64,000 nt of DNA from sequence record LR756501.1, one strand, 5' to 3'. Below the pieces are notes generated by a model, which ran no database searches, was not told where the DNA came from, and saw nothing but the letters and a program-made list of their open reading frames with translations. Below are positions 7,183 through 55,323 of the stretch, piece after piece. The position numbers and the translations under genes were made by a program. Numbering within the stretch: position 1 is the stretch's first letter; the number at the start of each line of letters is the position of its first letter.

Positions 7183-8427
7183 ATGAATAACGTAATAACG
7201 ACATACGACGAATTCTTAAATGAAGAATTGTTGGATGAAACTAGAGCTAAGATTTTGAAATGGTGGAACAACTTTCAAAATAGAGATAATGTAATAAGAA
7301 AGATTCACATGTACCTTAACGCTGGTTCGTGGGCAGCTCTTTTCATTTTTATAGCCACTCTTATAGCTATGTGGACACCTACCGATGTTGGTAGAACAAT
7401 ACAATCTTTAATTAAAGAACATAAGTTAATATACTGGGCAATTTTTGCTATGTTGAGTAGTGTAAACACCGGTGATAAACAATTAATGAAGAAAAGAAAA
7501 GAATTAGTAGAAAAGAAAATGAAAGAACTCAGAGAAATGTTCGCTGAGAAAAATTATACAAGTCATTATTACGTTGTTTTGGGCGATAAAAAAGATATTA
7601 AAGCAGTTTTAGATAAACTTAAAGCTGATGATCTTATTACAGACGCAAATGTTATTGATGTTGCTGATGTAACACTGGTTGATTTTTCAAAAACTTATAA
7701 TATCAAAGAACCAGATAAAGCTGCAGATCCTTACGGTGAAGAAGACTGGGCTGATCAAGAAGTTGATGAGAGAGAAGCTTTACAAATATCAAACGCTGCT
7801 AAGAATTTAGAGGATAAATATAAAGTTAATTTTAGAAAAGTAGAAGACGTAGTAGATTACATGGATAGTAAATGGGAAGATTATTCTATAGCTAAGAAAT
7901 TTACAAAATTTGGTAAAACTACATCTAAAATGTGGGATAGAGAATATCTCAGAAGCGTAGATAGAGTAAAACAAAGAAGAGAAGAAAGAAATAGAATACC
8001 TGAACCAGAAGGATTCGATGACGACGATGATGATATGGACGGTATAGATCCTATGGATGATTATTACCTCAATATAATGCCAAATGATTTAGAATATAAC
8101 AAAGTGCCTTTGACTGACGCTGAAGCAAATAATTATAACGTAGGTGATGTTATACCAATTGGAGGTGAAGACTATACAATAACAAGAATTGATACTGAGG
8201 AAGATGAGGCTTACGCTTACCCAAATCGTTTATTACCTAATAACTGGTTAGAAGAAGAAAGAGCAAAGGGCAACGTGAAAGATTTACCGGATGGTAATCG
8301 TAACGGTCAGAATTATCCAAGAGTGGCAGTGAAAATTGAACCACCAAAGAAAAGATTTATGGATAGATTCAAGGATTTTGTAGTTCCTGGGTTTGACGTA
8401 AAACCACCAGAAGTAATGGAAAGATAA
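7183..8427 (+). CDS. CTS-like and DPYGEExW-motif protein with hydrophobic helices
   Basis: MNNVITTYDEFLNEE; hydrophobic AALFIFIATLIAMW and LIYWAIFAML; DPYGEEDW at 7726-7749. Confidence 0.75.
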   Translation: MNNVITTYDEFLNEELLDETRAKILKWWNNFQNRDNVIRKIHMYLNAGSWAALFIFIATLIAMWTPTDVGRTIQSLIKEHKLIYWAIFAMLSSVNTGDKQLMKKRKELVEKKMKELREMFAEKNYTSHYYVVLGDKKDIKAVLDKLKADDLITDANVIDVADVTLVDFSKTYNIKEPDKAADPYGEEDWADQEVDEREALQISNAAKNLEDKYKVNFRKVEDVVDYMDSKWEDYSIAKKFTKFGKTTSKMWDREYLRSVDRVKQRREERNRIPEPEGFDDDDDDMDGIDPMDDYYLNIMPNDLEYNKVPLTDAEANNYNVGDVIPIGGEDYTITRIDTEEDEAYAYPNRLLPNNWLEEERAKGNVKDLPDGNRNGQNYPRVAVKIEPPKKRFMDRFKDFVVPGFDVKPPEVMER

Positions 8428-8429
8428 TT

Positions 8430-8795
8430 ATGATAAAAGAATTTGAATTATTTATCGAAGGAGTTCGTTGGTACGAAAAAGGGAAACTTGGCGAAAAAGA
8501 AGCTAGAGAAATAGATGAAGTCTTTAAAATAGGTGATAACGTTAGACCAATAGATACGTCTAATATTTATAAATGGCACGATGGGTACGATATAAAACAC
8601 CCTAAACCTGGTGAAGATGGATTCTGGGAAGAATCTAACGCTTTTAAAAATGAAAGTACAGATAGATACTGGGAAGTTAACGGGGTATGTGACTTTAATA
8701 GAGATGGTTACGACGGACAATTAATTCAATTAACTGAGAAATATCCTTGGTATCAAGCAAGAGGATTTAAAAAAGTAAATAAATATGGCGAATAA
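8430..8795 (+). CDS. hypothetical protein with CTS-like N-terminus
   Basis: MIKEFELFIE. Confidence 0.7.
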   Translation: MIKEFELFIEGVRWYEKGKLGEKEAREIDEVFKIGDNVRPIDTSNIYKWHDGYDIKHPKPGEDGFWEESNAFKNESTDRYWEVNGVCDFNRDGYDGQLIQLTEKYPWYQARGFKKVNKYGE

Positions 8796-9456
8796 AATAT
8801 CAATTAGAGACATAGAAGCAGCCATCAAAGAGGCTATGAAAGGCAGCGAAATACAATTCTCAGATTCAGTCTACGAAGAAAAAGATGGTAAACTCCGCCT
8901 CATAATCTTTTTTAATAAACTATTTACTAGCACCAACGTAGTTCTCTATACTAAACTCCTCTTTGAAGTCGATCAAAATAAAGAATACCTTGTTGAAAAC
9001 AGTAGCGGACAAAACTTCTTCAAATATCTTTATGATATTAACTGCCAATATAATATGAAAATTATTGACGATATGAATGATTTTAAGACACAATGGAAGA
9101 AGATTATAGACAGTAATGAATTTGGTCCTAACTTGAAAGTTTTATCTGAATTTATAAAACAGCCTTCTTTTATTGTTAATGAGTGGTTTAATAAGAATGA
9201 CGTTAAGGACATTTCTATGACTGGGTTTAAATACGAACCTAAGATGAAGATAATGCCTTGTAAGATATTATCGTTTCATTTTGTAATGAATGTGAATAAT
9301 TCAGAAGAAGTGGAACTCTTTATAAAGAAAGAAGGTAAGAATGATTTTATGTTAACCTTTACTATTAATGGTAAGAAGATAGATGTAGAGAAACCAGATT
9401 TAAGTGCTTTAGTGCAGACTATTGGTGAAACTCTAAAAGATAATATGGGACAATGA
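8785..9456 (+). CDS. hypothetical protein
   Basis: 223-aa ORF overlapping both neighbours. Confidence 0.75.
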   Translation: MANKISIRDIEAAIKEAMKGSEIQFSDSVYEEKDGKLRLIIFFNKLFTSTNVVLYTKLLFEVDQNKEYLVENSSGQNFFKYLYDINCQYNMKIIDDMNDFKTQWKKIIDSNEFGPNLKVLSEFIKQPSFIVNEWFNKNDVKDISMTGFKYEPKMKIMPCKILSFHFVMNVNNSEEVELFIKKEGKNDFMLTFTINGKKIDVEKPDLSALVQTIGETLKDNMGQ

Positions 9457-9860
9457 TAAAACTATTTGAAGCATATAAGAAGAGTTTAGATGAAATAGAA
9501 AATTTCAAAGATTTTTACGTCGTTGATAATGTGGGCAAATTCTTTGATATGTGTGATAGAAATGCCAATGAAGTTGTTAGATACATGACTCTTTTAAGTG
9601 ATAGTAATAGGATAAAAATAGAGAAACAAGATGGTAATATTATAAAATTCAGAGGGTTTAAATCAACTGATAATATGTCTTCTGCTTATCTAAAAACTTT
9701 TTGGGACGTGAATGTTGAAAAATGGAGATATATAATTTATTTAGTTGATAGCAAAGGTGAAGGATATAGAACGTCAGTTTACGATAAAATAACTTTTTAT
9801 AGACCAAAAGGAATATCATCCCCTTTAGATCCATACGGTGAGGAGGTTTGGGATGATTAA
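9453..9860 (+). CDS. CTS-like and C-terminal DPYGEEVW protein
   Basis: MIKLFEAY...DPYGEEVWDD*. Confidence 0.75.
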   Translation: MIKLFEAYKKSLDEIENFKDFYVVDNVGKFFDMCDRNANEVVRYMTLLSDSNRIKIEKQDGNIIKFRGFKSTDNMSSAYLKTFWDVNVEKWRYIIYLVDSKGEGYRTSVYDKITFYRPKGISSPLDPYGEEVWDD

Positions 9861-10281
9861 GAATTATTCAAAATATATAAAAGAAAGTGTTCAACCTGAC
9901 GGACCACCGCCTTTTAATTTAAAAGAGTTTAATCCTTATAACGACGTTTACGCTTATTATAAAGAAAAATATCAAAGTAATGGTTTTGAGTACGGTGAAT
10001 GGTCTAAAAAGTACGTAGATTACATGTTAAAAATATTAGAAAAAGGTAAATTCGTTATATTTTACGGTAATTCAACTTTAAAAGACGGTGAAAAACAAAA
10101 TAGAGGATATATTAAAGACGCTATACAACCAAATGATCAAAAAGCTGTAATTCATATTATTTTAGATGACGATATTGAATACGGTATGTACCCACACGAA
10201 ACAGTTAGAATATTTGATGAAGAACCTGAAAAAATACATAAAGAAGACGATCCGTACGGTGAAGAAGAATGGTATGATTAA
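9853..10281 (+). CDS. CTS-like and C-terminal DPYGEEEW protein
   Basis: Start moved to in-frame ATG at 9853 (MIKNYSKYIKE); ends DPYGEEEWYD*. Confidence 0.75.
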   Translation: MIKNYSKYIKESVQPDGPPPFNLKEFNPYNDVYAYYKEKYQSNGFEYGEWSKKYVDYMLKILEKGKFVIFYGNSTLKDGEKQNRGYIKDAIQPNDQKAVIHIILDDDIEYGMYPHETVRIFDEEPEKIHKEDDPYGEEEWYD

Positions 10282-12172: not shown

Positions 12173-12508
12173 ATGTTATCTGACGAACAAAGAGAAGAAA
12201 TCAGAAAAGATACAGAATATTTAAAAATATCACTTGATGATTTTAAAAAGAATCCTGATAAATATACAACGCCGGAATATACAACACCAGACGGTTCTGT
12301 TATATGTGTTATAAATTCTAATGAATATACAGCAATAGGAGTTATTTTACACGGACCATTTAAAGGACTTATAAATTCTTTCTTATGGAGTGAACTATCA
12401 CCGATTGGAATAACTAAGATAACAGAAGAAGATCCATACGGTGAAGAACAATGGGAAGGTAATGATATGAAAAATAGAATAAAGAGATTTAGAGATTTTA
12501 TTCAATAA
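12173..12508 (+). CDS. DPYGEEQW-motif protein with C-terminal CTS-like tail
   Basis: ...DPYGEEQWEGNDMKNRIKRFRDFIQ*. Confidence 0.7.
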   Translation: MLSDEQREEIRKDTEYLKISLDDFKKNPDKYTTPEYTTPDGSVICVINSNEYTAIGVILHGPFKGLINSFLWSELSPIGITKITEEDPYGEEQWEGNDMKNRIKRFRDFIQ

Positions 12509-12544: not shown

Positions 12545-13054
12545 ATGTTGAAAATATATCAAGAATTCTTAGCTGTAAATGAAGAGATGGCAGCCTTTGA
12601 TCCATCAGATAGATTAAGATGGGCTGTTCACGAGATCATGATGCGTCTTAAAGACGGTGCTACTATGAAATTCGGTGAAATGAGTAAAGTTTTAAAATCT
12701 GATTTTAAAATAGATATAGCAGAGGATCTCCTTAAAGATATATTTGAAGCGTGGGATAAATATAACGATCCAGATTATAGTTTCTTTAAAAAGGAAGATA
12801 AAAACTGGATGGATGCCTTTTGTTTCCAGGGACACGTTAAACGTAAATGTAGAGATAAACAGAGTTTCGGTAAACACAGAAAGAAAGAAGTTACATATTC
12901 AACTGGCAATGCTTATGGTTATTGGCAAGGTAACAAATGGATACCATATAATACAGGTGTATCTAGAACAGCAAAAGGAAGTAGTGCTCTTGACGATTTA
13001 GAAGACGATAGATGGTTAAATCCTTACGGTAACGGCGTTTATTACGGTGATTAA
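12545..13054 (+). CDS. hypothetical protein with CTS-like N-terminus
   Basis: MLKIYQEFLAVNEE; C-terminal NPYGNG variant motif. Confidence 0.7.
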   Translation: MLKIYQEFLAVNEEMAAFDPSDRLRWAVHEIMMRLKDGATMKFGEMSKVLKSDFKIDIAEDLLKDIFEAWDKYNDPDYSFFKKEDKNWMDAFCFQGHVKRKCRDKQSFGKHRKKEVTYSTGNAYGYWQGNKWIPYNTGVSRTAKGSSALDDLEDDRWLNPYGNGVYYGD

Positions 13055-13066: not shown

Positions 13067-13645
13067 ATGGTGAAGAAATATAAACAATTTCTGTTTGAAT
13101 GGGGGTACGGAGGTGAAGGAGGCGTTGCTTCTAAAGATCCTATCAAAGTTAGAAGTGCCATGCTCACAGAGATAGATCCTATTGAAGCAAGAGAAGAAGA
13201 GGAAGAAGAAGATAATACAGATATTCCTATTCTATCAGACGCGAACGAATCAGTTGATAACGATAATGATCCTTACGGTGAAGAAAATTGGGAAGAAAAT
13301 TTACCAAGTTATAGTTATATGTCGTGGGATAACGGTATTTATAGTTTCTTAAAACAATTGAAAAACTCATTCATAGATGAATGTCTTGCTGGTCTAGAAA
13401 GAGTAGAACAGAAAGACGCGGAAGAATGGTTAGATGATATAAGAAATGAAATAGACGATGGCGATTACAACTTTAGTTCAGAAGAAATTAGAGCCATACG
13501 TGACGATATAGATGATTTACTCGAATTATGTGTGGATAATGAAGATGATGACGATAGAGACGAAGGACCAGATCCAGATGAATATTACGATAGAAAAAGA
13601 GAAGAAGAACATGAAAGATGGGAGAGGGAGTACGAGGATAAATAA
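13067..13645 (+). CDS. acidic CTS-like and DPYGEENW protein
   Basis: MVKKYKQFLFE; DPYGEENW at 13268-13291. Confidence 0.75.
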   Translation: MVKKYKQFLFEWGYGGEGGVASKDPIKVRSAMLTEIDPIEAREEEEEEDNTDIPILSDANESVDNDNDPYGEENWEENLPSYSYMSWDNGIYSFLKQLKNSFIDECLAGLERVEQKDAEEWLDDIRNEIDDGDYNFSSEEIRAIRDDIDDLLELCVDNEDDDDRDEGPDPDEYYDRKREEEHERWEREYEDK

Positions 13646-13958: not shown

Positions 13959-14273
13959 ATGATAACTATGTTCGAGCAATATAATGAATTAGATCCTTAC
14001 GGTGAAGAGAATTGGAGTGATAAACCTAAAATAGAAGAAGGATATTTCTGCATTAGAATGTTAAGAGATTTTAATATTAATCTATCACACGGTAGTTATG
14101 ACGAAGATTACGCAGAAGAATATACAACAGTATTAAAATGTGATGCTGGTGACGAAATTTATGTGGATATAATTTATGTAGAAAATAATTACGTTACTAT
14201 AACAGCAGACACTGGTGAAGATTACGTTGGTGTAGGCAATATACCAACAGACTGTTTTGAAATAGTGAATTAA
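13959..14273 (+). CDS. CTS-like and DPYGEENW protein
   Basis: MITMFEQYNELDPYGEENW. Confidence 0.75.
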   Translation: MITMFEQYNELDPYGEENWSDKPKIEEGYFCIRMLRDFNINLSHGSYDEDYAEEYTTVLKCDAGDEIYVDIIYVENNYVTITADTGEDYVGVGNIPTDCFEIVN

Positions 14274-14745: not shown

Positions 14746-14746
14746 A

Positions 14747-17252: not shown

Positions 17253-17443
17253 GATAAATCCTCCTTTTTGTAATTTTCTAATGGGCACCAATGTGGTATT
17301 ACCATATCAGCTTCCAATATTTTATTTGCGAATTCACAAGTGTATTCGTAAATTGGTAAGTCGTCATCCAAAGGTCTGCCTTTTATTGAATGAGGACAAT
17401 AGAAACAATCTTTATCTATTAAGTAACCATCTGTTATTTTCAT
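17249..17443 (-). CDS. small Cys-containing hypothetical protein
   Basis: CFYC...C...CP; overlap-coupled between the two GT genes. Confidence 0.55.
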   Translation of the reverse strand: MKITDGYLIDKDCFYCPHSIKGRPLDDDLPIYEYTCEFANKILEADMVIPHWCPLENYKKEDLS

Positions 17444-20400: not shown

Positions 20401-20862
20401 TTCTATCACTTCTGATGGTATTCCGAATTTATTAAATTTGAAGCAGTTATATTGTGATACAAATAAGAATTTATCTGGAAACCAAATTTTATCGTCAACG
20501 TTGTAGTCGGATGAATGTGTAGTTTCAAAGATTTTGTATTTCCTATCTAGTTTATAAATATCTTTAGCTAGATTAAAATCTATATTAAAAAGTTCTGGTA
20601 TCTCTTCAAAATGAATATAGTCTGGTTGAACTTTTTCAATTATGTCTAATAGTTCCCTTTTATTCTCACCGAGAGTCCAAAAATGATCAGGAGCGAGAAG
20701 TTTTTTGAGCCTGTTCTTTTGAATAACAAAATCGTTTGAGTAGTTATTAAATTCAACTACATAGATATCGAGATCGTCTTTAACTAGTTCTACTCTTTTT
20801 ACCAATACTTGTGGGGCGCCCCCTGTTGATAAGTGAGGTGTAATAGACAATAATTTTTTCAT
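17440..20862 (-). CDS. multidomain glycosyltransferase (GT4-like N-terminus plus further GT-A-like domains)
   Basis: ITPHLSTGGAPQ, NVGLFTPRKNQ, DACDLFLFTSR...ELNPLVIKEAL; later IFESDC DxD-like motif. Confidence 0.75.
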   Translation of the reverse strand: MKKLLSITPHLSTGGAPQVLVKRVELVKDDLDIYVVEFNNYSNDFVIQKNRLKKLLAPDHFWTLGENKRELLDIIEKVQPDYIHFEEIPELFNIDFNLAKDIYKLDRKYKIFETTHSSDYNVDDKIWFPDKFLFVSQYNCFKFNKFGIPSEVIEYPVEKSTPTPERKAEAMKKLGLDPKFKHVVNVGLFTPRKNQAYAFDIARKLKNEKIQFHFIGNQADNFQDYWRPLMKIKPKNCNILGERDDIDEWLDACDLFLFTSRGFRWNKELNPLVIKEALEHQIHQFLFPLDVYNRKYDIEETIHYLNGDEDIDAGLVKNFLFPREIKTDKKYKIRAVHLLLEEDDRKSESIKQLERLKEFGIDYVQHINQRYTEIPPRELCARPNDVGRIGAYSLKGPHYGNYHSFKKAVFTEATEDVDFLMIFESDCKLAVPIEEFTDKVFQSCDHINERGIYYMSFGDNRNLRTGELVSDDQGKINDWMYITNKIIGIQSIMFPKFAFDYIKRSYETILWDVSDLLYNDMFKRRTKAIAPRLTTQIEGVSTIQGENVEHFLKKNVDTLVKDKNSNDVIIEYNKEDQKFYFCLSDFFQQDIADFSIVVNAGEAKNIYTAKSTLSPYNPIWVMIYGHQKYDEFSFDVSHNGIFLFTKILKLDIVPDSDKVRKEISELVEVSKDTSIYPLKDDFDLDFKAEENKLYLPYNGPLKDVRLNVFIRNIETGDIIYTAENLVFNNGGYCNWISPGVNYYKTDPNFIGFSADYMVKDKLLFVKELRLIRDTKPKIIDIEVKEIIENPTPISEPKGNVYLVLTYPDTKIKEDTTELCIDSLKSTGNKIILASHYPVNKSLQEKVDYYLYDAYNPLIGHSLYNLYWSTLPQGKVEIRLDRLQKNSNLNQSLTVFNNIENSIKFAKSAGYDKVISVSYDFILNQSNIDTINKICDRMDNENKKGYFMSFNEGDMKLYKSVFFIVNTEFYSSVFDKVVRTPWDYNTECENNGSHNFLENYFYTKLSKHSKNLIIEETNEEKLFNNSNINIFSGVEYLAILPVKNQGNSFIVWFNSSNNKDNRRIEFLFENNGKVETSTHFVKERSYYLRKVIMSNTDNYNITATFLDSTTNSVLDVQKFNVNMNNYKDIIENGLFTERDEE

Positions 20863-27658: not shown

Positions 27659-27982
27659 TTAAGAAAAACATTCAGGACATCTACCGTCACTTACAAATTG
27701 AGTTCCACAATCGTCACAAGTTCTTAAAGGCATTTGTGGAGCAGTCTTTCTTCCTTTTATAAAATTATTCCACTGTTTATGATATTTCTTTTTATAATGT
27801 TCACAATTTTTTTCAGATTGTGATAAATAACATTCTGAATCACAAGCTAATCCTGCTTCTGAATTTGGGTATAGATAATCTAAAAAACAACCCCCTTCTG
27901 GACATTCACAAATTTCCCAATTCTCTTCACCGTAGGGATCAAGTTCTTTTTTAGAATCAAACATTTTAAATTTTTTTATCAA
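27659..27982 (-). CDS. Cys-rich DPYGEENW-motif protein (start may be the later ATG, MFDSKK)
   Basis: DPYGEENW at 27917-27940; CECPEGGC, CDSEC, CDDC...CPEC. Confidence 0.65.
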   Translation of the reverse strand: MIKKFKMFDSKKELDPYGEENWEICECPEGGCFLDYLYPNSEAGLACDSECYLSQSEKNCEHYKKKYHKQWNNFIKGRKTAPQMPLRTCDDCGTQFVSDGRCPECFS

Positions 27983-31368: not shown

Positions 31369-34300
31369 ATGCCAATAAGTAACAAAGATTTAGGAAAGTA
31401 CAAACGTCCAGGTATTTTCATCGAAGAGATAGATCTATCGATGATTGAACGTCCAATTCAGGAAGTACTAATCAACTTAGTACCTGGCTTCTCTAAGAAG
31501 GGTCCTTTCAATAAGCCTGTTAGGGTTAATAGCCCACAGGAATTTGAGGACATTTTTGGACCAGTGGACAAAAACCTTGAAAACAAAGGTTCATACTTCC
31601 ACAGATTTGTAGAGGATATGTTGACTGTGGGTCCCGTTTGGGCACTCAATTTATTGAAGACTGATCCTACTAGAGATCAATTGGAATGGGAATCTATCTC
31701 AGTTTCAGCTCAGTACGATAACGGTCCTAAGAACTCTTCACCTTATGAAAGATTTTTCAATAGACAAGATTTCTGGGAAAGAGACGTAGAATCCTTTATG
31801 GATATTGTTGATCTAGAATTTATTGATAATCCAAATCAACCAAATCCAGCACATGATTTGTTTAGTATAACAAATATGGGGGATAAGAAAATCACATTAT
31901 GGACATTCAAATCTTCAATAACAGGATTTGACGTATCTGCTGAAAGTTGGTACGGTGGAGCTGATAAAGTTCCTTTATTCATGAACACAAAAGATTACAT
32001 CTCTGATTATATGATTAGTGTTTTATCAGTTGTAGGTGACTATACTGATTACGCAACTCTAAGTGTTGACCCATATTGGGGCAAATACTTTAACGCTAAT
32101 GGTTTAATCAAGACACAAGTTCAAAATTTTGTTAGTGATAGATTAACAACAGTTAACGCTTATTACGATGTATGTTTAATTCCAAATTTCAGAGATACAT
32201 CTGGAAGAGATATGTATATCAAGAATGTTATTAACGCAGCAACCGAGCAAACTGGTTTATTCTGTTATTACAACGAAGAATATCTGTTAAACTCAGATTT
32301 CTACAAAGGTAATATTGATACAATTGGTGCAACTTTAGTTCTTACAGAAGACGTTATTAACAATGTTATTCCAAAAACTTCAATTGATTTTATGTCTTAT
32401 AAAACCAATTTAAGTGAAAGTGTAACATACGCTGAAAAAGGATTAGATTACGTTGGGAACCCATTTGGTAACTACGACGACGATATGATAACATCATGGG
32501 TTAGTGGTAGAACAGGTCAATATACAAACTGGTACACCAACATAGCACCAACAGCAGTAACTAATATGTATTCAACTGTTATAACAGGTGTTGTTTCATC
32601 AGCTATCACATTAACAAGTGTAACAGGTGTTGAAGTTAACGATACAATCTATTTCAGTAAATCATTCGGTATCTTAGAAAAAGATTTACCATATTATGTT
32701 TTAACAATAGTTGGTAATAACATAACAATATCTAAAACCAAAGGTGGTCCAATTTTAACGGGACTTTCTTCTGGCACAAATGTTTTCGCTTATAGTTTAA
32801 AACAAAAATTCTACGATGCTATTGGAAGTTTCTCTTACAATATCAACACAGGATATACATTATCAGATAGTGTATTATTCTTAGAACCATTTGTTGTTAA
32901 CAATAGTGCACAAACATACAGTAGATATGATATTGTATATTTAAGTACAGATAATTCAACAATACATACAGTAAAAGGAAATCAAGTAACTGGTACATCA
33001 CCAAGTAAACCAAACTTCCTTTTAAGCAACGCCAATACAATCATCCTTGGTTATATGAAAATTGAATATAACTTAGTGTCTAGTGTAACTCCAACTTTTA
33101 CAAAAACTTGGACAGCAGTAACAGTAGATGAAACTAAATATTTAGTTTTAGCTGATGGTACAGACGTTTCAGCAGTATCTGGTGTAACAGTAGCTGGTAT
33201 CAAATATTTAGATCTTTATTTCTTAGGAACATCTGGATCAACAGATTATACCAACTATCTCAAATTAAGAAAATCAAAAATTTTCACCGAGATTTACACC
33301 AATTTATTAACTGGTAAATCTGTTATAATTAACAAAGCAGACGGAAGTAAATATTCTGTAACAGCTACAGTTTTTGAGGCTACAACCACATCTGACGCTC
33401 ACGTTATCATATACTTCGATAGTTTAACTGCTACAAATCCATTTAATTATTACGTAAGTGGAAGTTTCTTAATCTATTATATAGACTACGAATTAGATTT
33501 TACCCCAGGTACAAATTCATTGGACACTTTAACAACAACTAATAAACCAATTGGTTATTATTCTGGTCTTAATACTGGTATAGTTGCCAAATACTCAACA
33601 TTATACCAAGATTATTACAACGGTATAATTAATAATGGTGATTACATTTATCAAAATAACGATAGTGGAACAACAATAAAAATTTATTTGAAAATGTTCT
33701 TGAATTCAGATAAGAACTTAACAATTAAATTTGCTAGTTCTCCAGAAGGTGATCCAGATACTACATTAACTAATGTTAGTGTAAATTATCAAGACGCTAA
33801 TGGTAACATAGCTTTAATAGTTTACTCAAATAAATCAAATTACAAGCAATCACTTGAAATTGAAAACACAAGTTATATCACAGATTTTAATAATGTAAAC
33901 TATGTTTATGTTGATAAAACTAGATATTCAGAAGTAACTAAAGGCTGGTACTTAGAAGCATATTATGACGCATCATATTATGATTCCCCAGGTGAAGGTT
34001 ATATCTTAGGAGCAGTTCCAAGAAAACTTGTTCGTATAACAAAGACAGCTATCGATACTGTTAACCCAATGTTAAAAATCTTATACGCTGACGGCCCAAT
34101 TAGAATTTTAAGTAACCCAACAGGTTCAACTTACGATTACTATACCACAGCTTATATGTCGATTGATAACTATGTTGGTGAATACAATGGTTTAACATTA
34201 AAACCATTTACAGTACATCCAGATTCAATGCCAAATAACACAGACGCTAGATTAGATAGCATAATGAGTGTGTTAGATAAATCAACAAACTTAGCTAAGG

Positions 34301-35226
34301 GTTTGGCTAATAAGAACAGAATCACATGGAGATACTTAGTAGACTCCTTCGGTTTAGGTCTTACAGATTATTCTAAACAAGAATTTGTTGATCTTTGCGG
34401 TATGAAACTCAACTGTCTTGGTTTCATCAATATGCCAAGTGCAAGACAATTTAAAACATCAATCAACCCAAGTTTTATCAATGACGATAGAACTATAAAT
34501 ACTACATACATTAAAGAAGGTGGAAACCCAGACCTTAACCCAAGCTTTGAATATAGCTTCGGTAACGGTGTAGGTATGAGTTGTGTAGGTTATTTCTTCC
34601 CATATGTTAAGGACGTAAATGACGTTACCAAGTTTATACCACCTGCAGCTAAAGTATGCAAAACCTACATGAAGAAATTCACTGGTGGTTTAGGAAACGC
34701 TTATCCATGGCAAATCATAGCAGGTCCACAGTTCTCATTAATAACAGACATTTCAACAACTGAAATGAGATTTACTAATGAAGACCTCGAAAACTTCTAC
34801 GCAATGGGAGCTAACCCAATTGTTTACTCACTTAACAGAGGATATAACATCAACTCAGAAAGCTCAGCACAGGTTTATCCACTTAGCTCACTAAGTTATA
34901 TTCACTCAAGAGAAGTTCTCATCGAACTTGAAAACAGACTTTATGATATGTTACTCAACTATCATTGGAGATTTAACACTCCTGAAATTAGAGCTGAAAT
35001 CAAGTTCAGAGCAGATCAAATCTGTAAAGAACTTCTAGACTCAAATGCACTCTATGACTTCAAGAACGTTTGTGATAAAACAAACAATACTGATTACATC
35101 ATAGACTTACAAATGGGTGTACTTGATACATATATCGAAATCATCAAGGGTATGGGTATCATCGTAAACAACATCACAATCCTCAAAAAGGGTACTATCG
35201 CATCTGGTGGGTTCTTACCAGCATAA
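31369..35226 (+). CDS. contractile tail sheath protein (T4 gp18-like), enlarged
   Basis: RPGIFIEEID, VPGFSKKGPFNKPV, EDIFG N-terminus; MGANPI...LSYIHSREVLIELE...FNTPEIR C-terminus. Confidence 0.92.
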   Translation: MPISNKDLGKYKRPGIFIEEIDLSMIERPIQEVLINLVPGFSKKGPFNKPVRVNSPQEFEDIFGPVDKNLENKGSYFHRFVEDMLTVGPVWALNLLKTDPTRDQLEWESISVSAQYDNGPKNSSPYERFFNRQDFWERDVESFMDIVDLEFIDNPNQPNPAHDLFSITNMGDKKITLWTFKSSITGFDVSAESWYGGADKVPLFMNTKDYISDYMISVLSVVGDYTDYATLSVDPYWGKYFNANGLIKTQVQNFVSDRLTTVNAYYDVCLIPNFRDTSGRDMYIKNVINAATEQTGLFCYYNEEYLLNSDFYKGNIDTIGATLVLTEDVINNVIPKTSIDFMSYKTNLSESVTYAEKGLDYVGNPFGNYDDDMITSWVSGRTGQYTNWYTNIAPTAVTNMYSTVITGVVSSAITLTSVTGVEVNDTIYFSKSFGILEKDLPYYVLTIVGNNITISKTKGGPILTGLSSGTNVFAYSLKQKFYDAIGSFSYNINTGYTLSDSVLFLEPFVVNNSAQTYSRYDIVYLSTDNSTIHTVKGNQVTGTSPSKPNFLLSNANTIILGYMKIEYNLVSSVTPTFTKTWTAVTVDETKYLVLADGTDVSAVSGVTVAGIKYLDLYFLGTSGSTDYTNYLKLRKSKIFTEIYTNLLTGKSVIINKADGSKYSVTATVFEATTTSDAHVIIYFDSLTATNPFNYYVSGSFLIYYIDYELDFTPGTNSLDTLTTTNKPIGYYSGLNTGIVAKYSTLYQDYYNGIINNGDYIYQNNDSGTTIKIYLKMFLNSDKNLTIKFASSPEGDPDTTLTNVSVNYQDANGNIALIVYSNKSNYKQSLEIENTSYITDFNNVNYVYVDKTRYSEVTKGWYLEAYYDASYYDSPGEGYILGAVPRKLVRITKTAIDTVNPMLKILYADGPIRILSNPTGSTYDYYTTAYMSIDNYVGEYNGLTLKPFTVHPDSMPNNTDARLDSIMSVLDKSTNLAKGLANKNRITWRYLVDSFGLGLTDYSKQEFVDLCGMKLNCLGFINMPSARQFKTSINPSFINDDRTINTTYIKEGGNPDLNPSFEYSFGNGVGMSCVGYFFPYVKDVNDVTKFIPPAAKVCKTYMKKFTGGLGNAYPWQIIAGPQFSLITDISTTEMRFTNEDLENFYAMGANPIVYSLNRGYNINSESSAQVYPLSSLSYIHSREVLIELENRLYDMLLNYHWRFNTPEIRAEIKFRADQICKELLDSNALYDFKNVCDKTNNTDYIIDLQMGVLDTYIEIIKGMGIIVNNITILKKGTIASGGFLPA

Positions 35227-36885: not shown

Positions 36886-36893
36886 ACAAAATT

Positions 36894-37370: not shown

Positions 37371-37417
37371 TATATAATATTGAAAGGAACAACCTATAAA
37401 AAAAAAGTAAACAAAAA

Positions 37418-38651: not shown

Positions 38652-38668
38652 AAATGGGGTTTTTTTAT
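38638..38668. terminator. bidirectional terminator
   Basis: CCCCATT-CTAAA-AATGGGG plus T run at a convergent junction. Confidence 0.7.
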
Positions 38669-39711: not shown

Positions 39712-39776
39712 TATATATAAAATTACGAATTTAGATTTTAAAAATGGAGAATTTTATTTTTATATATAGCCATAAG

Positions 39777-40676
39777 ATGAAAACTTTTAATCAATTTATC
39801 AATGAAGGCAAACTAGGACCAGGTTCAAGAGCAGAAACCGCAGGTAAGTTCATGGGTAGAGCTAAAGACGATAAATACGCAGATGAAGTCTTCAACGAAA
39901 TGATAAAAGACTACGAAGAAAGCGGTAAAAATCTTAAAAAGATTCATATTTCATCTAGGTTTAGTACAATGAGATATTATTTTGGAACTACAAGGTGGGA
40001 CGCTGGTAACAGGAAAGTTGGAGATAAAGAAGTAAGAGTCAACGCCGTTAATAATACTGGTGCTTTATTCGAAATTCTTGAATGGCACGAGAATCCAAAA
40101 CACGATCCAAATTACCAGATGGATGTTGATATTGAATGGGAAGGTAACTTTCCACATGTAATTAGAAGAAATGATAATCAGGATAATAGAGATAAAATGA
40201 GAATCTATGATCAGTACGAAGAACAATTTTATATTTCAAGAAATCTTGCTAGAAAAATGATTATTTATTTTGCTAACGAGTACGATAAACAATACCCACA
40301 ATTAAAGAATAATCAAGAAGGCAGAAGTTATTGGCAAATTAAAGCCATAGAAAATGGTGAAAAAATAAGAATTGGATGGGTTGATCAATTTGCTAAGAAC
40401 GGTGTTGAGTGTATATTTGACGTATTTGAACCAGGCGAAAAAGAAAAATATGAAAAATGGATTAAAAACAGTTTTGCTGTAAAGACAAAAAGTAAAGACG
40501 GTTATCCTATAACATTTTGTTATCCAGCACCAGATATAGATGTTGATAAAGTGGTTGATCCTTATGGGGAAGAGGAATGGGGAGATGATTCAGAACAAGG
40601 TGTAATAGAGTGGTTAAACACGTTAACTAAAAAAGAGATTGAAGAAAAAATTCAAAAAGAAATAAACAAATACTAA
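39777..40676 (+). CDS. CTS-like and DPYGEEEW protein
   Basis: Start moved to ATG 39777 giving MKTFNQFINE (T4 IPII/IPIII CTS is MKTYQEFIAE); DPYGEEEW at 40557-40580. Confidence 0.8.
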   Translation: MKTFNQFINEGKLGPGSRAETAGKFMGRAKDDKYADEVFNEMIKDYEESGKNLKKIHISSRFSTMRYYFGTTRWDAGNRKVGDKEVRVNAVNNTGALFEILEWHENPKHDPNYQMDVDIEWEGNFPHVIRRNDNQDNRDKMRIYDQYEEQFYISRNLARKMIIYFANEYDKQYPQLKNNQEGRSYWQIKAIENGEKIRIGWVDQFAKNGVECIFDVFEPGEKEKYEKWIKNSFAVKTKSKDGYPITFCYPAPDIDVDKVVDPYGEEEWGDDSEQGVIEWLNTLTKKEIEEKIQKEINKY

Positions 40677-40696: not shown

Positions 40697-40978
40697 ATGG
40701 GAACGATCGTCAAGACATACGAAGAGTGGGGATTTTTTAAAAAGGAATTGACCCCAGATGAAGAATATCAAAAACAAAAAAAACAAGCTTTAAGAGATAA
40801 GGTGAAACCAGGTAACGCCCCTGAAGTAGAACCAGGTGAAGATGAAGATAAAGAACAAGAAGATAGACAAATGAATAGAAGAGAAGTTAACAAGATTAGA
40901 AATCTCAAAAATGACGATTACGGTGAAGAATTTTGGGAGGACGAAGCAGGAGATAAAAACACAAAATCACCTTGTTAA
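40697..40978 (+). CDS. CTS-like protein with DDYGEEFW variant
   Basis: MGTIVKTYEEW; N-terminus paralogous to 41362-41580. Confidence 0.7.
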   Translation: MGTIVKTYEEWGFFKKELTPDEEYQKQKKQALRDKVKPGNAPEVEPGEDEDKEQEDRQMNRREVNKIRNLKNDDYGEEFWEDEAGDKNTKSPC

Positions 40979-44044: not shown

Positions 44045-44215
44045 TTGAAAGACAGACCTTTAAAAGAAAAAGAGAGTATTTGGCTTTGTCCAGACTGTGA
44101 TGGTAAAGGTTATATTGATAAAGGTCAATGTCCTCTATGTAAAGGTAAAGGTGAACTTAGATTTCCTACCACTTCCTCTCAAAAGGATTTCGAAGATCCC
44201 CAGCCTTCTGATTAA
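44045..44215 (+). CDS. small DnaJ-type CxxCxGxG zinc-finger protein (56 aa, TTG start, not in ORF track)
   Basis: CPDCDGKG...CPLCKGKG; overlaps the terminase 3' end by about 50 nt. Confidence 0.5.
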   Translation: MKDRPLKEKESIWLCPDCDGKGYIDKGQCPLCKGKGELRFPTTSSQKDFEDPQPSD

Positions 44216-46484: not shown

Positions 46485-47438
46485 TTATGGGGTGTGGCCA
46501 TTGCCTTCTGCTCTTACTAGGAAATCTTCCCAAGGTTCCCAAGAAAACTCGTCATTTTGTTTATTTCTTTGGAACTGCCAACCTAAGTGTTGCATAGTCA
46601 TATTTCTACTTGAGCAATCGTTATAGATTATATTTAATCCGTTATCTTCTATATATTCTATAACTCTATAAGTATCAAATATTGATGGTAAATAATGACC
46701 AGCGTATATTAATTTTTCGTTCAACCCCTTTTTCTTTAACGCGTCTCTATTATCATCGCACACAGAAAGTTCGTGCAAATTAAGATAATCTAATCCAATC
46801 TCATTTAATCTTGGTAAGACTGAGATAAGTTTATCTACTTGCCAAAATTCAGAAGGTACTTCAACACAAATCTTATCAAAAATCTTCTTACAGTAAACAA
46901 GTTTATCTATTATATCTTCTCTATATCCTGTTGCAGCGAGATCAAATCTAATCTCATTAATACCGTGTTCTTTTAATTTAATACAATCTTCTTCTGTAAC
47001 AAGAGTTCCATTAGTATAAATCCATTTATAAAGATTAAGTTGTTCAAAATTTTCGTTGATAAAATCTAACCATTCATATACTTTATCAAGATACATAAAA
47101 GGTTCACCACCAGAAAATGATATACCAGTTATTCTTGGATTCTTATAAATAACTCTTTTTAAATCAACTAAAGAATGTATATCATCGTTACCGCCATTTG
47201 CCCATATGAATTCATCAACACCGTGTCTTGATATTTGTGGACAAGAAGCACATTTAAGGTTACAACTAACACCTATATAAACACATATCCATTGCCCACT
47301 CTTACAGGCGTAACAACCCTGTGATAATTCCTTACCTATTGGTACTATGGTAGCACCTGAATTTGATATTTCTATTTTATCTATAATTCTTTGTCTAAGT
47401 GAGTCTGATATATTTCTAGCATCTACATATTCTATCAT
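46485..47438 (-). CDS. radical SAM protein
   Basis: CNLKCASC CxxxCxxC, SFSGGEP, YTNG; extra N-terminal GCYAC. Confidence 0.88.
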   Translation of the reverse strand: MIEYVDARNISDSLRQRIIDKIEISNSGATIVPIGKELSQGCYACKSGQWICVYIGVSCNLKCASCPQISRHGVDEFIWANGGNDDIHSLVDLKRVIYKNPRITGISFSGGEPFMYLDKVYEWLDFINENFEQLNLYKWIYTNGTLVTEEDCIKLKEHGINEIRFDLAATGYREDIIDKLVYCKKIFDKICVEVPSEFWQVDKLISVLPRLNEIGLDYLNLHELSVCDDNRDALKKKGLNEKLIYAGHYLPSIFDTYRVIEYIEDNGLNIIYNDCSSRNMTMQHLGWQFQRNKQNDEFSWEPWEDFLVRAEGNGHTP

Positions 47439-54137: not shown

Positions 54138-54226
54138 TATAAGGTTTTATTTTACTCTATATATTAAATTTTGAAAACTAAATCACAAAAAAATAATATA
54201 ATTTAAAAATAAGTGAATAATGTAAC

Positions 54227-54595
54227 ATGAATGACGATGTAGAGAGTAAAAAGAAAGAACTAAAAGAAAGACTGGAAAGTGACTTATACGTTGATAGATA
54301 TAGCTCTTTTAGAGAGTCAGTTGAACTTATCAATAAAGCACTTGAGTCTTTTAAAATTAACTATCAGTACACTTATAACGAATTTTGTTCTGATTTTACA
54401 GATGAATGTTTGAAATACATTGACGAACATCCAAAAGTAGATATGACCGATCCACAACAAATGATGGTATATACTTTTCCAATAGTTATGTCGATAGTGG
54501 ATCGTGCAAAAAATAAATACGGAATCAAAGATGATAAACATAATAGCGAGATTATTGAACAACAGGTTCAAAAAGAAGATGGAGAAAAGCAATAA
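54227..54595 (+). CDS. hypothetical protein
   Basis: 122-aa ORF. Confidence 0.65.
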   Translation: MNDDVESKKKELKERLESDLYVDRYSSFRESVELINKALESFKINYQYTYNEFCSDFTDECLKYIDEHPKVDMTDPQQMMVYTFPIVMSIVDRAKNKYGIKDDKHNSEIIEQQVQKEDGEKQ

Positions 54596-54699
54596 ACCAT
54601 TAACAAAAAAGAAATTAGTACCTCTTGTTTATGGAGGTATTCCAAAACCACCAAGACCTAAAATTAGAACTGTCGGTGAGTAAAAAGTAATTAACGAAC

Positions 54700-55323
54700 A
54701 TGATTAATTTTATAGCAAACAAACTAAATAATAGATATAAAAGGCTTTTAGAAGAAGATATAGAAAGACAGATAGCTGAAGACGAAAGAAAGAAAGCCGA
54801 AGAAGAAAGATTAGCAAATATACCACTAAATATTCCAGATAATAAATGGTGGGTTAGTAGTAATCCTATTGAAGAGGATAAATGGTACGATGGTGTATTT
54901 TCAAGTGGCACTACAATACCAGATAGTAAATGGTCAAACGGTACTTGGTTAGGAGTATCTGGATCATCTGGTTACGGAGTATCAGGAAGTGCCGGTGTAT
55001 CAGGTAGTGCAGGCGTATCAGGAACTAGAGGACTTAGTGGATCATCTGGTTTTTCAGGGACTTCTAGTTATTCTAATCCAGGTATAAAATACGCTGAATA
55101 TTTAGCAGAACAAATAGATAAATCTATAAATTATCAAGAATATATAGCAGAACAACTTGATAAAAGTATTCAATATAGTGAATATGTAGCTGAGCATATT
55201 GATGTAACAAATTATACAAATTGGATGAACGGTTACGCTCAAGCACACGCTAAACCAAAAAAAGAAGTTAAAAGGGTTTATAGTCAAGAAGATCCTTACG
55301 GTGAAGAAGATTGGTCAGTATGA
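54700..55323 (+). CDS. mosaic protein: GxSGSS repeats, 14-aa YxEYxAExxDKSIx repeats, C-terminal DPYGEEDW
   Basis: Read directly from the translation. Confidence 0.75.
   Translation: MINFIANKLNNRYKRLLEEDIERQIAEDERKKAEEERLANIPLNIPDNKWWVSSNPIEEDKWYDGVFSSGTTIPDSKWSNGTWLGVSGSSGYGVSGSAGVSGSAGVSGTRGLSGSSGFSGTSSYSNPGIKYAEYLAEQIDKSINYQEYIAEQLDKSIQYSEYVAEHIDVTNYTNWMNGYAQAHAKPKKEVKRVYSQEDPYGEEDWSV

What the first reader, a model, noticed from the sequence alone, without database searches (positions are those of the whole stretch)
7726..55314. Shared DPYGEExW peptide in 10 otherwise unrelated proteins
Seen: D-P-Y-G-E-E-x-W is encoded at 7726, 9828, 10249, 12431, 13268, 13992, 27917 (minus), 40557 and 55291, with DDYGEEFW at 40913 and a weaker NPYGNG near 13019. 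The carrier proteins are otherwise dissimilar. The motif sits at termini or in acidic, likely disordered stretches. Codons vary synonymously (CCT/CCA/CCG/CCC, TAC/TAT, GGT/GGG), so selection acts on the peptide and not on a DNA site. Most carriers also have a capsid-targeting-like N-terminus. Inference: a short linear docking signal for one common partner, such as prohead scaffold, portal/ejection machinery or a host hub protein, defining a cohort of cargo proteins. I know of no description of it.
Basis: partly seen in the sequence, partly recalled or inferred. Interest (0 to 1): 0.9.

Follow-up and report, generated by a model that had tools for sequence, protein, structure and literature searches.

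The report
Invariant peptide tag across phage proteome
An eight-residue peptide, DPYGEExW, is stamped unchanged on about a hundred otherwise unrelated proteins of the largest published phage genome, and in slightly different versions on uncultured relatives, so it looks like a portable address label read by a still unknown partner, which I could not find described for phages.

Summary
None is expected by chance. The window is part of the 735-kb 'Mahaphage' LR756501. That genome holds 103 perfect DPYGEExW copies in about 89 proteins (roughly 9% of genes) and only 10 one-residue variants. All synonymous codons are used, and no copy is out of frame or non-coding, so selection acts on the peptide.

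Copies sit at extreme C-termini (41, usually W plus 2 residues), just after a short N-terminal leader (19), or in inter-domain linkers (43). In membrane proteins they are always on the cytoplasmic side. In the one family that could be modelled they lie in a disordered stretch.

Carriers are mostly orphans. They also include LRR binders, zinc ribbons, enzymes, a pseudo-protease and pieces of capsid, portal, sheath and scaffold proteins.

Related uncultured phages carry their own versions (DPF…, and KRKLNLEDDPWGEENWGWE). A sister genome with 51% capsid identity has none. Cellular genomes have it only at chance level. No Pfam, PHROG or NCBIfam model and no paper covers it.

Best reading: a portable docking tag read by one co-evolving, probably phage-encoded partner. 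Delivery to the prohead or virion is the leading but unproven destination.

The parts
7726..7749 (+). DPYGEEDW, internal copy (residues 182-189 of 414) in ORF 7183-8427. This is a membrane-helix protein with an MNNVITTYDEFLNE leader.
9828..9851 (+). DPYGEEVW, C-terminal tag (W plus 2 residues, then stop) of ORF 9453-9860 (135 aa, leader MIKLFEAYKK).
9837..9860 (+). Dual-coding gene junction GGTGAGGAGGTTTGGGATGATTAA. The G-E-E codons form a Shine-Dalgarno-like GAGGAGG. The next gene's ATG (9853) lies inside the last two codons, so that gene starts MIKNYSKYIKE at 9853, not at GTG 9838.
10249..10272 (+). DPYGEEEW, C-terminal tag (W plus 2) of ORF 9853-10281 (142 aa).
12431..12454 (+). DPYGEEQW, 17 residues before the C-terminus of ORF 12173-12508 (111 aa, no leader).
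13019..13036 (+). NPYGNG at the C-terminus of ORF 12545-13054 (leader MLKIYQEFLAVNE). At most a decayed copy; it does not match the motif.
13268..13291 (+). DPYGEENW, internal copy (residues 68-75 of 192) in an acidic stretch of ORF 13067-13645 (leader MVKKYKQFLFE).
13992..14015 (+). DPYGEENW, N-terminal class (residues 12-19) directly after the leader MITMFEQYNEL in ORF 13959-14273 (104 aa).
27917..27940 (-). DPYGEENW, N-terminal class (residues 15-22) after the leader MIKKFKMFDSKKEL in ORF 27659-27982 (107 aa, Cys-rich).
40557..40580 (+). DPYGEEEW, 31 residues before the C-terminus of ORF 39744-40676. An internal Met gives the leader MKTFNQFINE.
40913..40936 (+). DDYGEEFW, a one-residue variant (P to D) in ORF 40697-40978 (93 aa). 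It is one of only 10 such variants in the genome.
55291..55314 (+). DPYGEEDW, C-terminal tag (W plus 2) of ORF 54700-55323 (207 aa). This protein has a collagen-like G-x-S stretch and the YxEYIAExLDKSIxY repeats of the prohead protease-scaffold protein.
31369..35226 (+). Tail sheath gene, itself untagged. Pieces of its N- and C-terminal ends recur elsewhere in the genome as small C-terminally tagged proteins (record 554941 and 553796).

Best explanation
DPYGEExW is the core of a portable peptide tag of about 16 residues with its flanks (+x[IV][FY][ST][DE]x-DPYGEExW-[DE][DE]). It spread by copying of a DNA cassette onto the disordered termini and linkers of about 9% of this phage's proteins. 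It is kept invariant because one dedicated partner, co-evolving with the lineage and therefore probably phage-encoded, binds it. The Tyr and Trp would act as anchors in an acidic frame.

Shown: peptide-level selection, placement in flexible cytoplasmic segments, portability across unrelated proteins, and lineage-specific versions. Inferred: that a single reader exists and that it is phage-encoded.

The most likely use of the tag is to gather a cohort of accessory proteins at a phage assembly. That assembly would most probably be the prohead core or virion, so that the proteins travel with the DNA. In that case the tag is a second address label working beside the T4-type N-terminal capsid targeting leader. 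I give about 0.6 to 'docking tag with a dedicated reader' and about 0.25-0.3 to 'the destination is the prohead or virion'. The confidence of 0.5 is for the docking-tag statement with the destination left as a leading guess.
For: Copy number and invariance:
- 103 perfect copies against 10 one-residue variants; none of the variants is at D, Y, E or E.
- All synonymous codons are used, with 46 distinct 18-mers. Every DNA near-match is an in-frame coding copy.
- The motif is kept perfect in 50 of 59 homologue pairs whose flanks are under 40% identical.

Placement:
- 41 copies are C-terminal, 19 follow an N-terminal leader and 43 are in linkers, with up to 4 per protein.
- The AlphaFold model of the LRR family gives pLDDT 40-64 for the leader plus tag and above 95 for the domain.
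- All 10 membrane carriers have the tag on the basic, cytoplasmic side.

Lineage restriction:
- Each lineage has its own version and flanks. 205 kb of the W lineage holds 32 W copies and no Y or F. 935 kb of Y-lineage loci holds 261 Y, 4 F and 1 W.
- The sister genome LR756502 has none, although its capsid protein is 51% identical and its GC content is the same.
- Cellular genomes hold it only at chance level.
- Codon bias in the tag runs opposite to the genome (TAC 74% against 36%, CCT 67% against 34%). One 18-mer accounts for 24 copies, which points to spread of a DNA cassette.

Pointers to the prohead:
- Association with T4-type leaders, odds ratio 3.5.
- A tagged S77 pseudo-protease sits beside a canonical copy that is instead fused to the scaffold.
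- A scaffold-repeat protein and pieces of the capsid and portal proteins are tagged. The same tagged pieces recur in related phages.
- Carrier types suit injected host-takeover proteins: LRR binders, Lar-like zinc ribbons, GNAT, methyltransferase and a tRNA CCA-adding enzyme.
Against: - No reader was identified.
- No virion proteomics exists, because the phage is uncultured.
- Membrane proteins carry the tag at the proteome-average rate (10 of 85 against 11.5%). This is unexpected for capsid contents.
- Tail-sheath pieces are tagged.
- The internal-protein-like paralogues in the head module have leaders but no tag.
- 43 copies are internal and some are tandem, which is unusual for a packaging signal.
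- Near-absolute invariance is stricter than in most binding motifs. It would fit an enzyme recognition site at least as well.
- Carriers are not distinguished by the promoter-like motif that precedes structural genes.
Confidence: 0.5

Rival explanations
1. The tag is a recognition site for a processing enzyme. Either a highly specific protease cuts at or beside it, releasing leaders and splitting multi-domain proteins. Or it is a degron handing carriers to an adaptor and AAA+ protease for timed removal.
For: Seven invariant positions resemble the specificity of site-specific viral proteases. The copies lie at domain boundaries and after short leaders. G-E-E fits the S/A/G-x-E pattern reported for giant-phage prohead proteases (own knowledge). 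Carriers span every protein class, including membrane proteins, as a generic turnover signal would. In the protease alignment the tag flank R[IV]Y..D lines up with RIYDISD at the protease-scaffold junction of the canonical protein (weak).
Against: In 41 copies only 0-4 residues follow W, so cleavage there would achieve nothing, yet these copies are as invariant as the rest. The leaders carry T4-type [IL]-x-E sites, which suggests T4-like protease specificity, and the tag does not match that. Degrons are usually degenerate and terminal, and 43 copies are internal.
Confidence: 0.2
2. The tag is a sticker for self-assembly. The acidic-aromatic tags would pair with the basic-aromatic N-terminal leaders (MIKKFKxFE) or with small beta-barrel (SH3/Tudor-like) domains of other phage proteins. 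That would build a multivalent network or condensate, or pair the products of neighbouring genes.
For: Charge and aromatic complementarity of tag and leader. Both are abundant (about 100 tags, about 190 leaders). Some proteins are multivalent, with tag and small-domain units alternating in a 1,233-aa protein. An SH3-like protein (record 159989-160816) is absent from the tag-less sister genome and from all other GenBank phages, but present near tags in the Y and W lineages.
Against: The gene downstream of a C-tagged gene has a leader in 11 of 32 cases against a base rate of 21%, which is not significant. Leaders are just as frequent in the tag-less sister genome (16.9%), so they do not need the tag. 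A profile of the small domain found no family beyond its seeds. A domain with a [KREQTNS]xGDx[VIL] signature follows the tag in only 7 of 58 cases.
Confidence: 0.1
3. The tag is a sequon for a post-translational modification of Tyr, Trp or Glu (for example glycosylation, nucleotidylation, ATP-grasp ligation or a radical-SAM crosslink).
For: Enzyme sequons can be this strict. The genome encodes large glycosyltransferases and a radical SAM enzyme in this very window. The variable third position is always aromatic across lineages (Y, F or W).
Against: Y, F and W are chemically different acceptors, so the third position is more likely a binding anchor than a modified residue. No modifying enzyme is linked to the tag arrays. 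Nothing here tests modification.
Confidence: 0.08
4. The tag has an intrinsic physical role with no partner, such as an acidic solubility tail, a metal-binding loop or a helix cap.
For: The tag and its flanks are strongly acidic. The same octapeptide forms a strand-loop-helix junction in a Lactobacillaceae enolase paralogue (the enolase assignment is from own knowledge).
Against: Such roles tolerate substitutions. Here D, P, Y, G, E and E never vary in 103 copies, while sister lineages switch in a coordinated way to another version. The tag is predicted to be unstructured in the LRR family.
Confidence: 0.03
5. The conserved unit is a nucleic-acid element, and the peptide is incidental. The element could be a Shine-Dalgarno or translational-coupling cassette, or a recombination junction.
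For: In C-terminal copies with an ATG within 12 nt, GAG codons rise to 46% against 15.5% elsewhere (p 3e-5), and GGAG/GAGG is present in 60% against 20%. The next gene's ATG often lies inside the last two codons. Codon bias suggests that a DNA cassette was copied.
Against: Only 25 of 99 copies precede a start codon. 46 different 18-mers encode the same six residues. Variation is confined to synonymous sites, and no copy is out of frame, antisense or intergenic. D-P-Y and W are not needed for ribosome binding. The Shine-Dalgarno use is therefore a secondary overlay.
Confidence: 0.02

Closest known systems
T4 capsid targeting sequence (CTS) of internal proteins IPI-IPIII
   Same: A short portable peptide shared by otherwise unrelated accessory proteins of a T4-like phage, which marks a cohort. 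This genome is T4-like in its head module: portal, S77 protease, scaffold, then gp23-like capsid protein. About 18% of its genes start with a leader matching the functionally mapped CTS positions, aromatic at 4 and 7, I/L at 8 and E at 10.
   Different: DPYGEExW has a different sequence and charge. It occurs at C-termini and in linkers as well as near N-termini, can be multi-copy, and carries no T4-type cleavage site. It is absent from a sister genome that keeps the leaders. So it is a separate signal and not a CTS variant.
C-terminal capsid-interior targeting tails: HK97 protease tail, herpesvirus protease/scaffold C-terminus, encapsulin cargo-loading peptides (own knowledge)
   Same: Short terminal peptides on flexible linkers load diverse cargo into HK97-fold shells. 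Here an S77 protease paralogue carries the tag at exactly its C-terminus, while the canonical copy is fused to the scaffold.
   Different: No binding to the shell or scaffold is shown. 43 copies are internal. Membrane proteins and sheath pieces carry the tag. The tagged protease paralogue appears catalytically dead.
Acidic-aromatic hub-docking tails and motifs: SSB C-terminal DDDIPF, T7 gp2.5 and gp4 tails, eukaryotic W-acidic kinesin-binding motifs (own knowledge)
   Same: Acidic residues plus an anchoring aromatic, placed in disordered tails, with many proteins converging on one binding site.
   Different: In the SSB systems one hub carries the tail and many partners read it. Here many proteins carry the tag. 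The DPYG turn has no counterpart in those motifs, and invariance here is far higher.
Proteome-wide sorting or degradation tags: -CTERM sorting signals, ssrA tag (own knowledge)
   Same: One short signature is appended to many unrelated proteins and read by one machine.
   Different: No membrane helix or basic tail follows the motif, and it need not be terminal. No NCBIfam sorting-signal model matches. The tag is encoded in each gene rather than added by tmRNA.

Membership tests
T4-type capsid targeting sequence | N-terminal ~10 residues with aromatic residues at positions 4 and 7 (targeting) and I/L at 8 plus Glu at 10 (processing) | tested here: not met
   DPYGEExW has none of these features and sits at any position. 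The separate N-terminal leaders of many carriers do meet it: consensus M-[ILV]-K-K-[FY]-x-x-[FY]-[IL]-[NK]-E, at 18.5% of starts against 5.7% at internal Met.
T4-type capsid targeting sequence | Sufficient to package a foreign protein into proheads and removed by the prohead protease | not testable with these tools
   The phage is uncultured, and no proteomics or genetics is available.
Capsid-interior cargo-loading peptide (encapsulin CLP / HK97 protease tail type) | Short peptide at a protein terminus on a flexible linker | tested here: inconclusive
   60 of 103 copies are terminal (41 C-terminal, 19 N-terminal) and 43 are internal. The tag is disordered in the one family modelled.
Capsid-interior cargo-loading peptide (encapsulin CLP / HK97 protease tail type) | Binds the inner surface of the shell or scaffold; cargo is found inside particles | not testable with these tools
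   No complex prediction or particle proteome is available. The only evidence is indirect: tagged pseudo-protease, scaffold-repeat, capsid and portal pieces.
Short linear motif (SLiM) in the ELM sense | Core of 3-10 residues in an intrinsically disordered region | tested here: met
   The core is 8 residues. pLDDT is 40-64 across leader plus tag and above 95 in the adjacent LRR domain. Copies lie in termini and linkers. Only one family was modelled.
Short linear motif (SLiM) in the ELM sense | Present in unrelated proteins and conserved more than its flanks among orthologues | tested here: met
   120 clusters among 188 carriers. The motif is perfect in 50 of 59 pairs with under 40% flank identity. 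There is ascertainment bias, because the loci were fetched by the motif.
Short linear motif (SLiM) in the ELM sense | A defined globular domain that binds it | not testable with these tools
The SH3-like protein at record 159989-160816 is only a phyletic lead.
Prohead protease cleavage site | T4 gp21 type: L/I at P3 and Glu at P1 | tested here: not met
   P3 would be Y or G for cleavage after either Glu.
Prohead protease cleavage site | The site separates a propeptide from a mature part of meaningful size | tested here: not met
   41 copies have 0-4 residues after W.
C-terminal sorting signals (sortase, exosortase or rhombosortase type) | Signature followed by a membrane helix and basic tail; matched by NCBIfam models | tested here: not met
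   28 copies end two residues after W. No NCBIfam family is shared by more than 2 of 84 carriers.
Nucleic-acid element (Shine-Dalgarno or recombination site) | Conserved at the nucleotide level irrespective of reading frame and coding status | tested here: not met
   46 distinct 18-mers encode the six residues. All 107 approximate DNA matches are in-frame coding copies. Shine-Dalgarno-like codon choice is limited to 25 junction copies.

The most novel reading that the evidence does not exclude
The tag is the universal handle of a phage 'bait-plus-handle' system. Binder modules would be fused to one handle that couples whatever they bind to a single phage machine, for sequestration, degradation or packaging. 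The binder modules are LRR arrays and, strikingly, conserved interface pieces of capsid, portal, sheath-arm and protease proteins. Such a system could poison the assembly of co-infecting relatives, or neutralise host sensors that recognise these conserved virion proteins. In effect it would be a natural, modular protein-targeting toolkit with lineage-private handles.
Probability: 0.12. Interest if true: 0.9.

Novelty: new variant of a known kind. Interest (0 to 1): 0.75.

Why it matters
Huge phages are mostly genes of unknown function.

If the destination is the prohead, the tag defines the injected arsenal of the largest published phage genome. It would also be a second, sequence-independent packaging signal beside the T4 CTS, and would be usable for loading foreign proteins into capsids.

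The lineage-private versions (Y, F, W with matching flanks) and a tag-free sister genome make the question directly testable by comparative genomics and peptide-protein co-folding. The tag also serves as a simple sequence marker for this phage lineage in metagenomes.

Tried and rejected
- Host mimicry. A scan of 185,579 bacterial and archaeal genomes gave 72 single hits, about chance level. Some 20 are a Lactobacillaceae enolase paralogue, and a few are probably mis-binned phage contigs. Rejected.
- Known family. Pfam, PHROGs and NCBIfam have no model covering the motif. Full-text searches for DPYGEE, DPWGEE, DPFGEE, PYGEEDW and PYGEENW found nothing on phages.
- DNA element. Rejected, apart from a secondary Shine-Dalgarno overlay.
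- Motif as the start of an SH3-like domain. A [KREQTNS]xGDx[VIL] signature follows the tag in only 7 of 58 cases, and a profile did not grow beyond its seeds.
- Expression class. A promoter-like WWTATATAN motif 15-25 nt upstream precedes portal, protease-scaffold, terminase and a sheath-like gene. Carriers have it as often as other genes (20% against 19%), so it is not informative.
- Homologue search. A word-indexed search with a small carrier returned only the protein itself.
- Structure. The AlphaFold model of the tagged pseudo-protease failed with 3 sequences (pLDDT 37).
- Solved structures. Single-sequence searches with the protease paralogues found nothing. Only a profile reached T4 gp21 (5JBL, E 1.4e-4).
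- Reader hunt. Genes absent from the tag-less sister but present near tags in several lineages gave a list of weak leads. The top one is an SH3-like protein found in no other GenBank phage. A pattern-based search for it in viral contigs found nothing.
- Counting ATGATTAA starts failed, because my ORF caller takes the longest ORF.

Full report
**1. What the window is.**
The window is 100% identical to LR756501.1 (and LR756503.1), an uncultured 735,411-bp phage. Window base 1 is record base 565,061. This is the 735-kb genome of the 'Mahaphage' clade, predicted to infect Bacteroidetes (PMC7162821). GC content is 31.5%.

The window encodes:
- a tail sheath at 31369-35226 (phrog_34521, 3e-75), a tube-like protein and a baseplate wedge subunit;
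- a T4-type large terminase with an intein, a gp32-like protein and a ribonucleotide reductase with an intein and an HNH endonuclease;
- two giant glycosyltransferases, a deacetylase-like protein and a radical SAM enzyme.

Elsewhere in the genome the head module runs in T4 order. It has a portal-like gene, an S77 protease fused to a repetitive scaffold, and a gp23-like capsid protein. The protease matches T4 gp21 (5JBL, E 1.4e-4). The capsid protein matches T4 gp23 structures (E 5e-5).

All gene calls used below are my own mechanical ORF calls: 1,040 genes covering 95% of the genome.

**2. The observation.**
There are nine DPYGEExW copies, one DDYGEEFW and one weak NPYGNG. Each lies in frame in an ORF. 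The degenerate DNA pattern gives 9 hits against 0.00 in shuffles.

Genome-wide there are 103 perfect copies. 99 of them lie in 85 of my called genes. The other four lie in ORFs of 77-106 aa that my overlap filter had dropped. From amino-acid composition, 1.3e-4 perfect copies are expected.

The motif is close to all-or-none:
- Of 110 DPYG and 108 GEExW strings in the six-frame translation, 103 are the full motif.
- A generously relaxed pattern adds a single site.
- Only 10 one-residue variants exist: 6 at W, 2 at P and 2 at G. None is at D, Y, E or E.
- DPYGEE is by far the most recurrent hexapeptide of the proteome, in 90 proteins. The next unrelated hexapeptide is in 9.

**3. Peptide, not DNA.**
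Every synonymous codon is used (P: 66 CCT, 20 CCA, 10 CCC, 3 CCG; Y: 73 TAC, 26 TAT; G: 66 GGT, 14 GGG, 13 GGA, 6 GGC). 46 different 18-mers encode DPYGEE. All 107 approximate matches to the commonest DNA version are in-frame coding copies.

The codon bias is nevertheless opposite to the genome's (TAC 74% against 36%, CCT 67% against 34%). One 18-mer accounts for 24 copies. This suggests the tag spread by copying of a DNA cassette and has since drifted only at silent sites.

Between homologues whose flanks are under 40% identical, the motif is perfect in 50 of 59 pairs. The comparison loci were fetched by the motif, so this figure is biased upwards.

**4. Anatomy.**
Positions fall into three classes:
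- 41 copies are at the extreme C-terminus. 28 of them have exactly two residues after W.
- 19 copies start within 25 residues of the N-terminus, after a leader such as MIKKFKIFE.
- 43 copies are internal. In multi-domain proteins these lie in the linkers, with up to four per protein.

Flanks extend the signature to roughly +x[IV][FY][ST][DE]x-DPYGEExW-[DEN][DE]. A second flavour is …LKHxD[IV]-DPYGEExW.

In the largest carrier family (LRR proteins, 21 members) AlphaFold gives pLDDT 40-64 for residues 1-30, which hold the leader and the tag. It gives above 95 for the LRR solenoid. This is the only family modelled.

Ten carriers have membrane helices. That is the same fraction as the rest of the proteome (10 of 85 against 110 of 955). 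In each of them the tag lies next to a strongly basic juxtamembrane stretch. By the positive-inside rule, that is the cytoplasmic side (inference).

**5. Who carries it.**
With the motif masked, 188 carriers from related contigs form 120 BLAST clusters, 90 of them singletons. Only 14 of the 85 genome carriers have any paralogue. Most match no Pfam, PHROG or NCBIfam family.

The recognisable carriers are:
- LRR proteins;
- zinc ribbons (Lar-like, DnaJ-type);
- a GNAT, a methyltransferase and a phosphoribosyltransferase;
- a 1,233-aa deaminase plus CCA-adding enzyme with four tags.

Unexpectedly, some carriers are small proteins made of pieces of virion proteins, 36-49% identical to the full-length genes:
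- an S77 protease domain;
- three pieces of the capsid protein;
- shuffled portal pieces;
- the N- and C-terminal ends of the tail sheath;
- scaffold repeats, the last being window ORF 54700-55323.

The tagged protease paralogues lack the residues that align with the probable catalytic Ser and, mostly, His of the canonical copy. In the only solved T4 gp21 chain these two positions are Ala. I read that as an inactive mutant from memory, so 'pseudo-protease' is an inference.

Tagged S77, Gp23 and sheath-C-terminal pieces recur among 146 carriers from related contigs, so they are conserved genes and not debris. Untagged pieces also exist, for example window 270-839. The full-length capsid, portal, sheath, terminase, gp32 and reductase proteins are not tagged.

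**6. Distribution.**

Two further scans revealed versions private to other lineages:
- DPFGEExW occurs in 3300001533 contigs, as MKYLKYFENxxIDPFGEEDW. It is also mixed with the Y form in one array.
- DPWGEExW occurs in 3300025715, 3300010429 and other contigs, with its own flank KRKLNLE[DE]DPWGEENWG[WY]E.

Over the W-scan loci (205 kb in total, a few of them high-GC contigs with isolated, chance-looking hits) there are 32 W copies and no Y or F. In 935 kb of Y-lineage loci there are 261 Y, 4 F and 1 W.

Among 50,697 GenBank phage records only LR756501 and LR756503 score with tag queries. I read the whole sister genome LR756502 (642 kb, GC 31.5%, capsid protein 51% identical). It has zero copies of the motif or of any relaxed form. 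Only 11 of 85 carriers have a homologue there, against 231 of 1,040 genes overall. So the tag marks the lineage-specific accessory genome, and those 11 homologues are by definition tag-less.

In 185,579 bacterial and archaeal genomes the pattern gives 72 single hits, about the chance expectation. About 20 are an enolase paralogue of Lactobacillaceae. A few are small low-GC contigs with the phage-type C-terminal context.

**7. The N-terminal leader is a separate signal.**
The consensus M-[ILV]-K-K-[FY]-x-x-[FY]-[IL]-[NK]-E occurs at 18.5% of gene starts, against 5.7% at internal Met. It matches the positions mapped as functional in the T4 CTS: residues 4 and 7 for targeting, 8 and 10 for processing (PMC9026906). 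From my own knowledge the T4 sequence is MKTYQEFIAE.

The leader is enriched among carriers: 45% against 19%, odds ratio 3.5. It is equally common in the tag-less sister genome, as MKHLKKYNE and related forms, at 16.9% against 5.0%. The internal-protein-like paralogues inside the head module have it without the tag. So the leader is ancestral and the tag is a later, independent addition.

**8. A secondary overlay.**
In 25 C-terminal copies an ATG follows within 12 nt of the W codon. In these, GAG codons reach 46% against 15.5% elsewhere (p 3e-5), and GGAG/GAGG occurs in 60% against 20%. Often the next gene's ATG sits inside the last two codons, as in …TGG RAT GAT TAA read as ATG ATT AA….

The tag's G-E-E codons therefore double as the ribosome-binding site of the next gene. 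That helps explain the fixed spacing of W plus 2. It cannot explain the motif itself, because D-P-Y and W are irrelevant to ribosome binding, and 74 copies have no start codon nearby.

**9. Interpretation.**
Shown:
- A portable peptide under extreme purifying selection.
- It sits in flexible cytoplasmic segments of unrelated proteins.
- It has lineage-private versions and is absent from close relatives and from cells.

Inferred: one dedicated reader that co-evolves with the lineage, probably phage-encoded.

I rank recruitment to the prohead or virion first, for four reasons:
- the association with T4-type leaders;
- a pseudo-protease that has the tag where the canonical protease has the scaffold;
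- the tagged scaffold-repeat, capsid and portal pieces;
- carrier types that resemble injected host-takeover proteins.

HK97 protease tails and encapsulin loading peptides are analogies (own knowledge).

The counter-evidence is real. Membrane proteins are tagged at the average rate. Sheath pieces are tagged. Head-module internal proteins are untagged. Many copies are internal or tandem.

Enzyme recognition (cleavage, degron or modification) and multivalent self-assembly remain live rivals. A nucleic-acid explanation and a partner-free physical role are close to excluded.

**10. Novelty and limits.**
I found no model or paper covering the motif. The kind of thing, a shared targeting or docking peptide, is known. 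This motif, its near-absolute invariance, its scale (about 9% of a proteome), its lineage-private versions and its attachment to pieces of virion proteins are, as far as I can tell, undescribed.

Limits:
- Only one family was modelled structurally.
- Gene calls are mechanical.
- Related loci were ascertained through the motif itself.

Noticed in passing
window-wide, e.g. 8430, 9453, 9853, 12545, 13067, 13959, 27982(-), 39777, 40996, 41362, 39265(-), 50830(-), 56915: About 20 of the 73 window ORFs start with a T4-CTS-like leader (M-[ILV]-K-K-[FY]-x-x-[FY]-[IL]-[NK]-E). Genome-wide the figure is 18.5% of genes. They include enzymes such as a P-loop kinase-like protein (38648-39265) and a nucleotidyltransferase (39262-39711). 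The tag-less sister genome LR756502 has the same habit with a different consensus (MKHLKKYNE).
   Followed up: partly
window 9837-9860; genome-wide junctions listed: The G-E-E codons of C-terminal tags double as the Shine-Dalgarno sequence of the next gene, and the next ATG often lies inside the last two codons. The ORF listed as 9838-10281 (GTG start) most likely starts at ATG 9853.
   Followed up: yes
window 270-839; record 542326, 276342, 730457, 142020, 15148, 668797 (outside the window): Many small ORFs are partial paralogues (30-44% identity) of the capsid and portal proteins without the tag. The genome holds at least 8 capsid-protein pieces and 4 portal pieces. Their purpose is unknown.
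   Followed up: partly
upstream of 202 genes, e.g. terminase (window 46433 side), portal, protease-scaffold: A promoter-like motif WWTATATAN peaks 15-25 nt upstream of start codons, often after a T-run. It may be the counterpart of the T4 late promoter TATAAATA.
   Followed up: partly
window 44166-46433(-) and 60358-63840(+): The large terminase and the ribonucleotide reductase large subunit each carry an intein. The reductase intein also carries an HNH endonuclease.
   Followed up: no
window 15075-17291(-) and 17440-20862(-); 28103-29011(+); 46485-47438(-): Two very large glycosyltransferase proteins (738 and 1,140 aa), a histone-deacetylase-family protein and a radical SAM enzyme lie among the tail genes.
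   Followed up: no
record 5558-7423 and 7451-9568 (L121, outside the window): A phage-encoded Hsp70-like gene (judged from its N-terminal sequence only) lies next to a 705-aa tagged protein with a DnaJ-type zinc finger. Tagged DnaJ-zinc-finger proteins recur in related contigs.
   Followed up: partly
record 36067-38280 (L121, outside the window): A phage-encoded hybrid sensor histidine kinase with PAS, HisKA, HATPase and receiver domains. It is absent from the sister genome.
   Followed up: no
record 159989-160816 (L124, outside the window): A 276-aa protein with an SH3-like domain (SH3_12, E 1e-5) and a CTS-like leader. It is absent from LR756502 and from every other GenBank phage, but has homologues near tags in both Y- and W-version contigs. 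It is a weak lead for the tag reader.
   Followed up: partly
L137, L150-L152, L156 and others (Lactobacillaceae genomes): A conserved Lactobacillaceae protein carries SIEDPYGEEDW. By its sequence it is an enolase paralogue (own knowledge). The octapeptide sits where other enolases have SIEDPF..DDW at a strand-loop-helix junction. This is probably coincidence, but it is the only structural context on record for the octapeptide.
   Followed up: no
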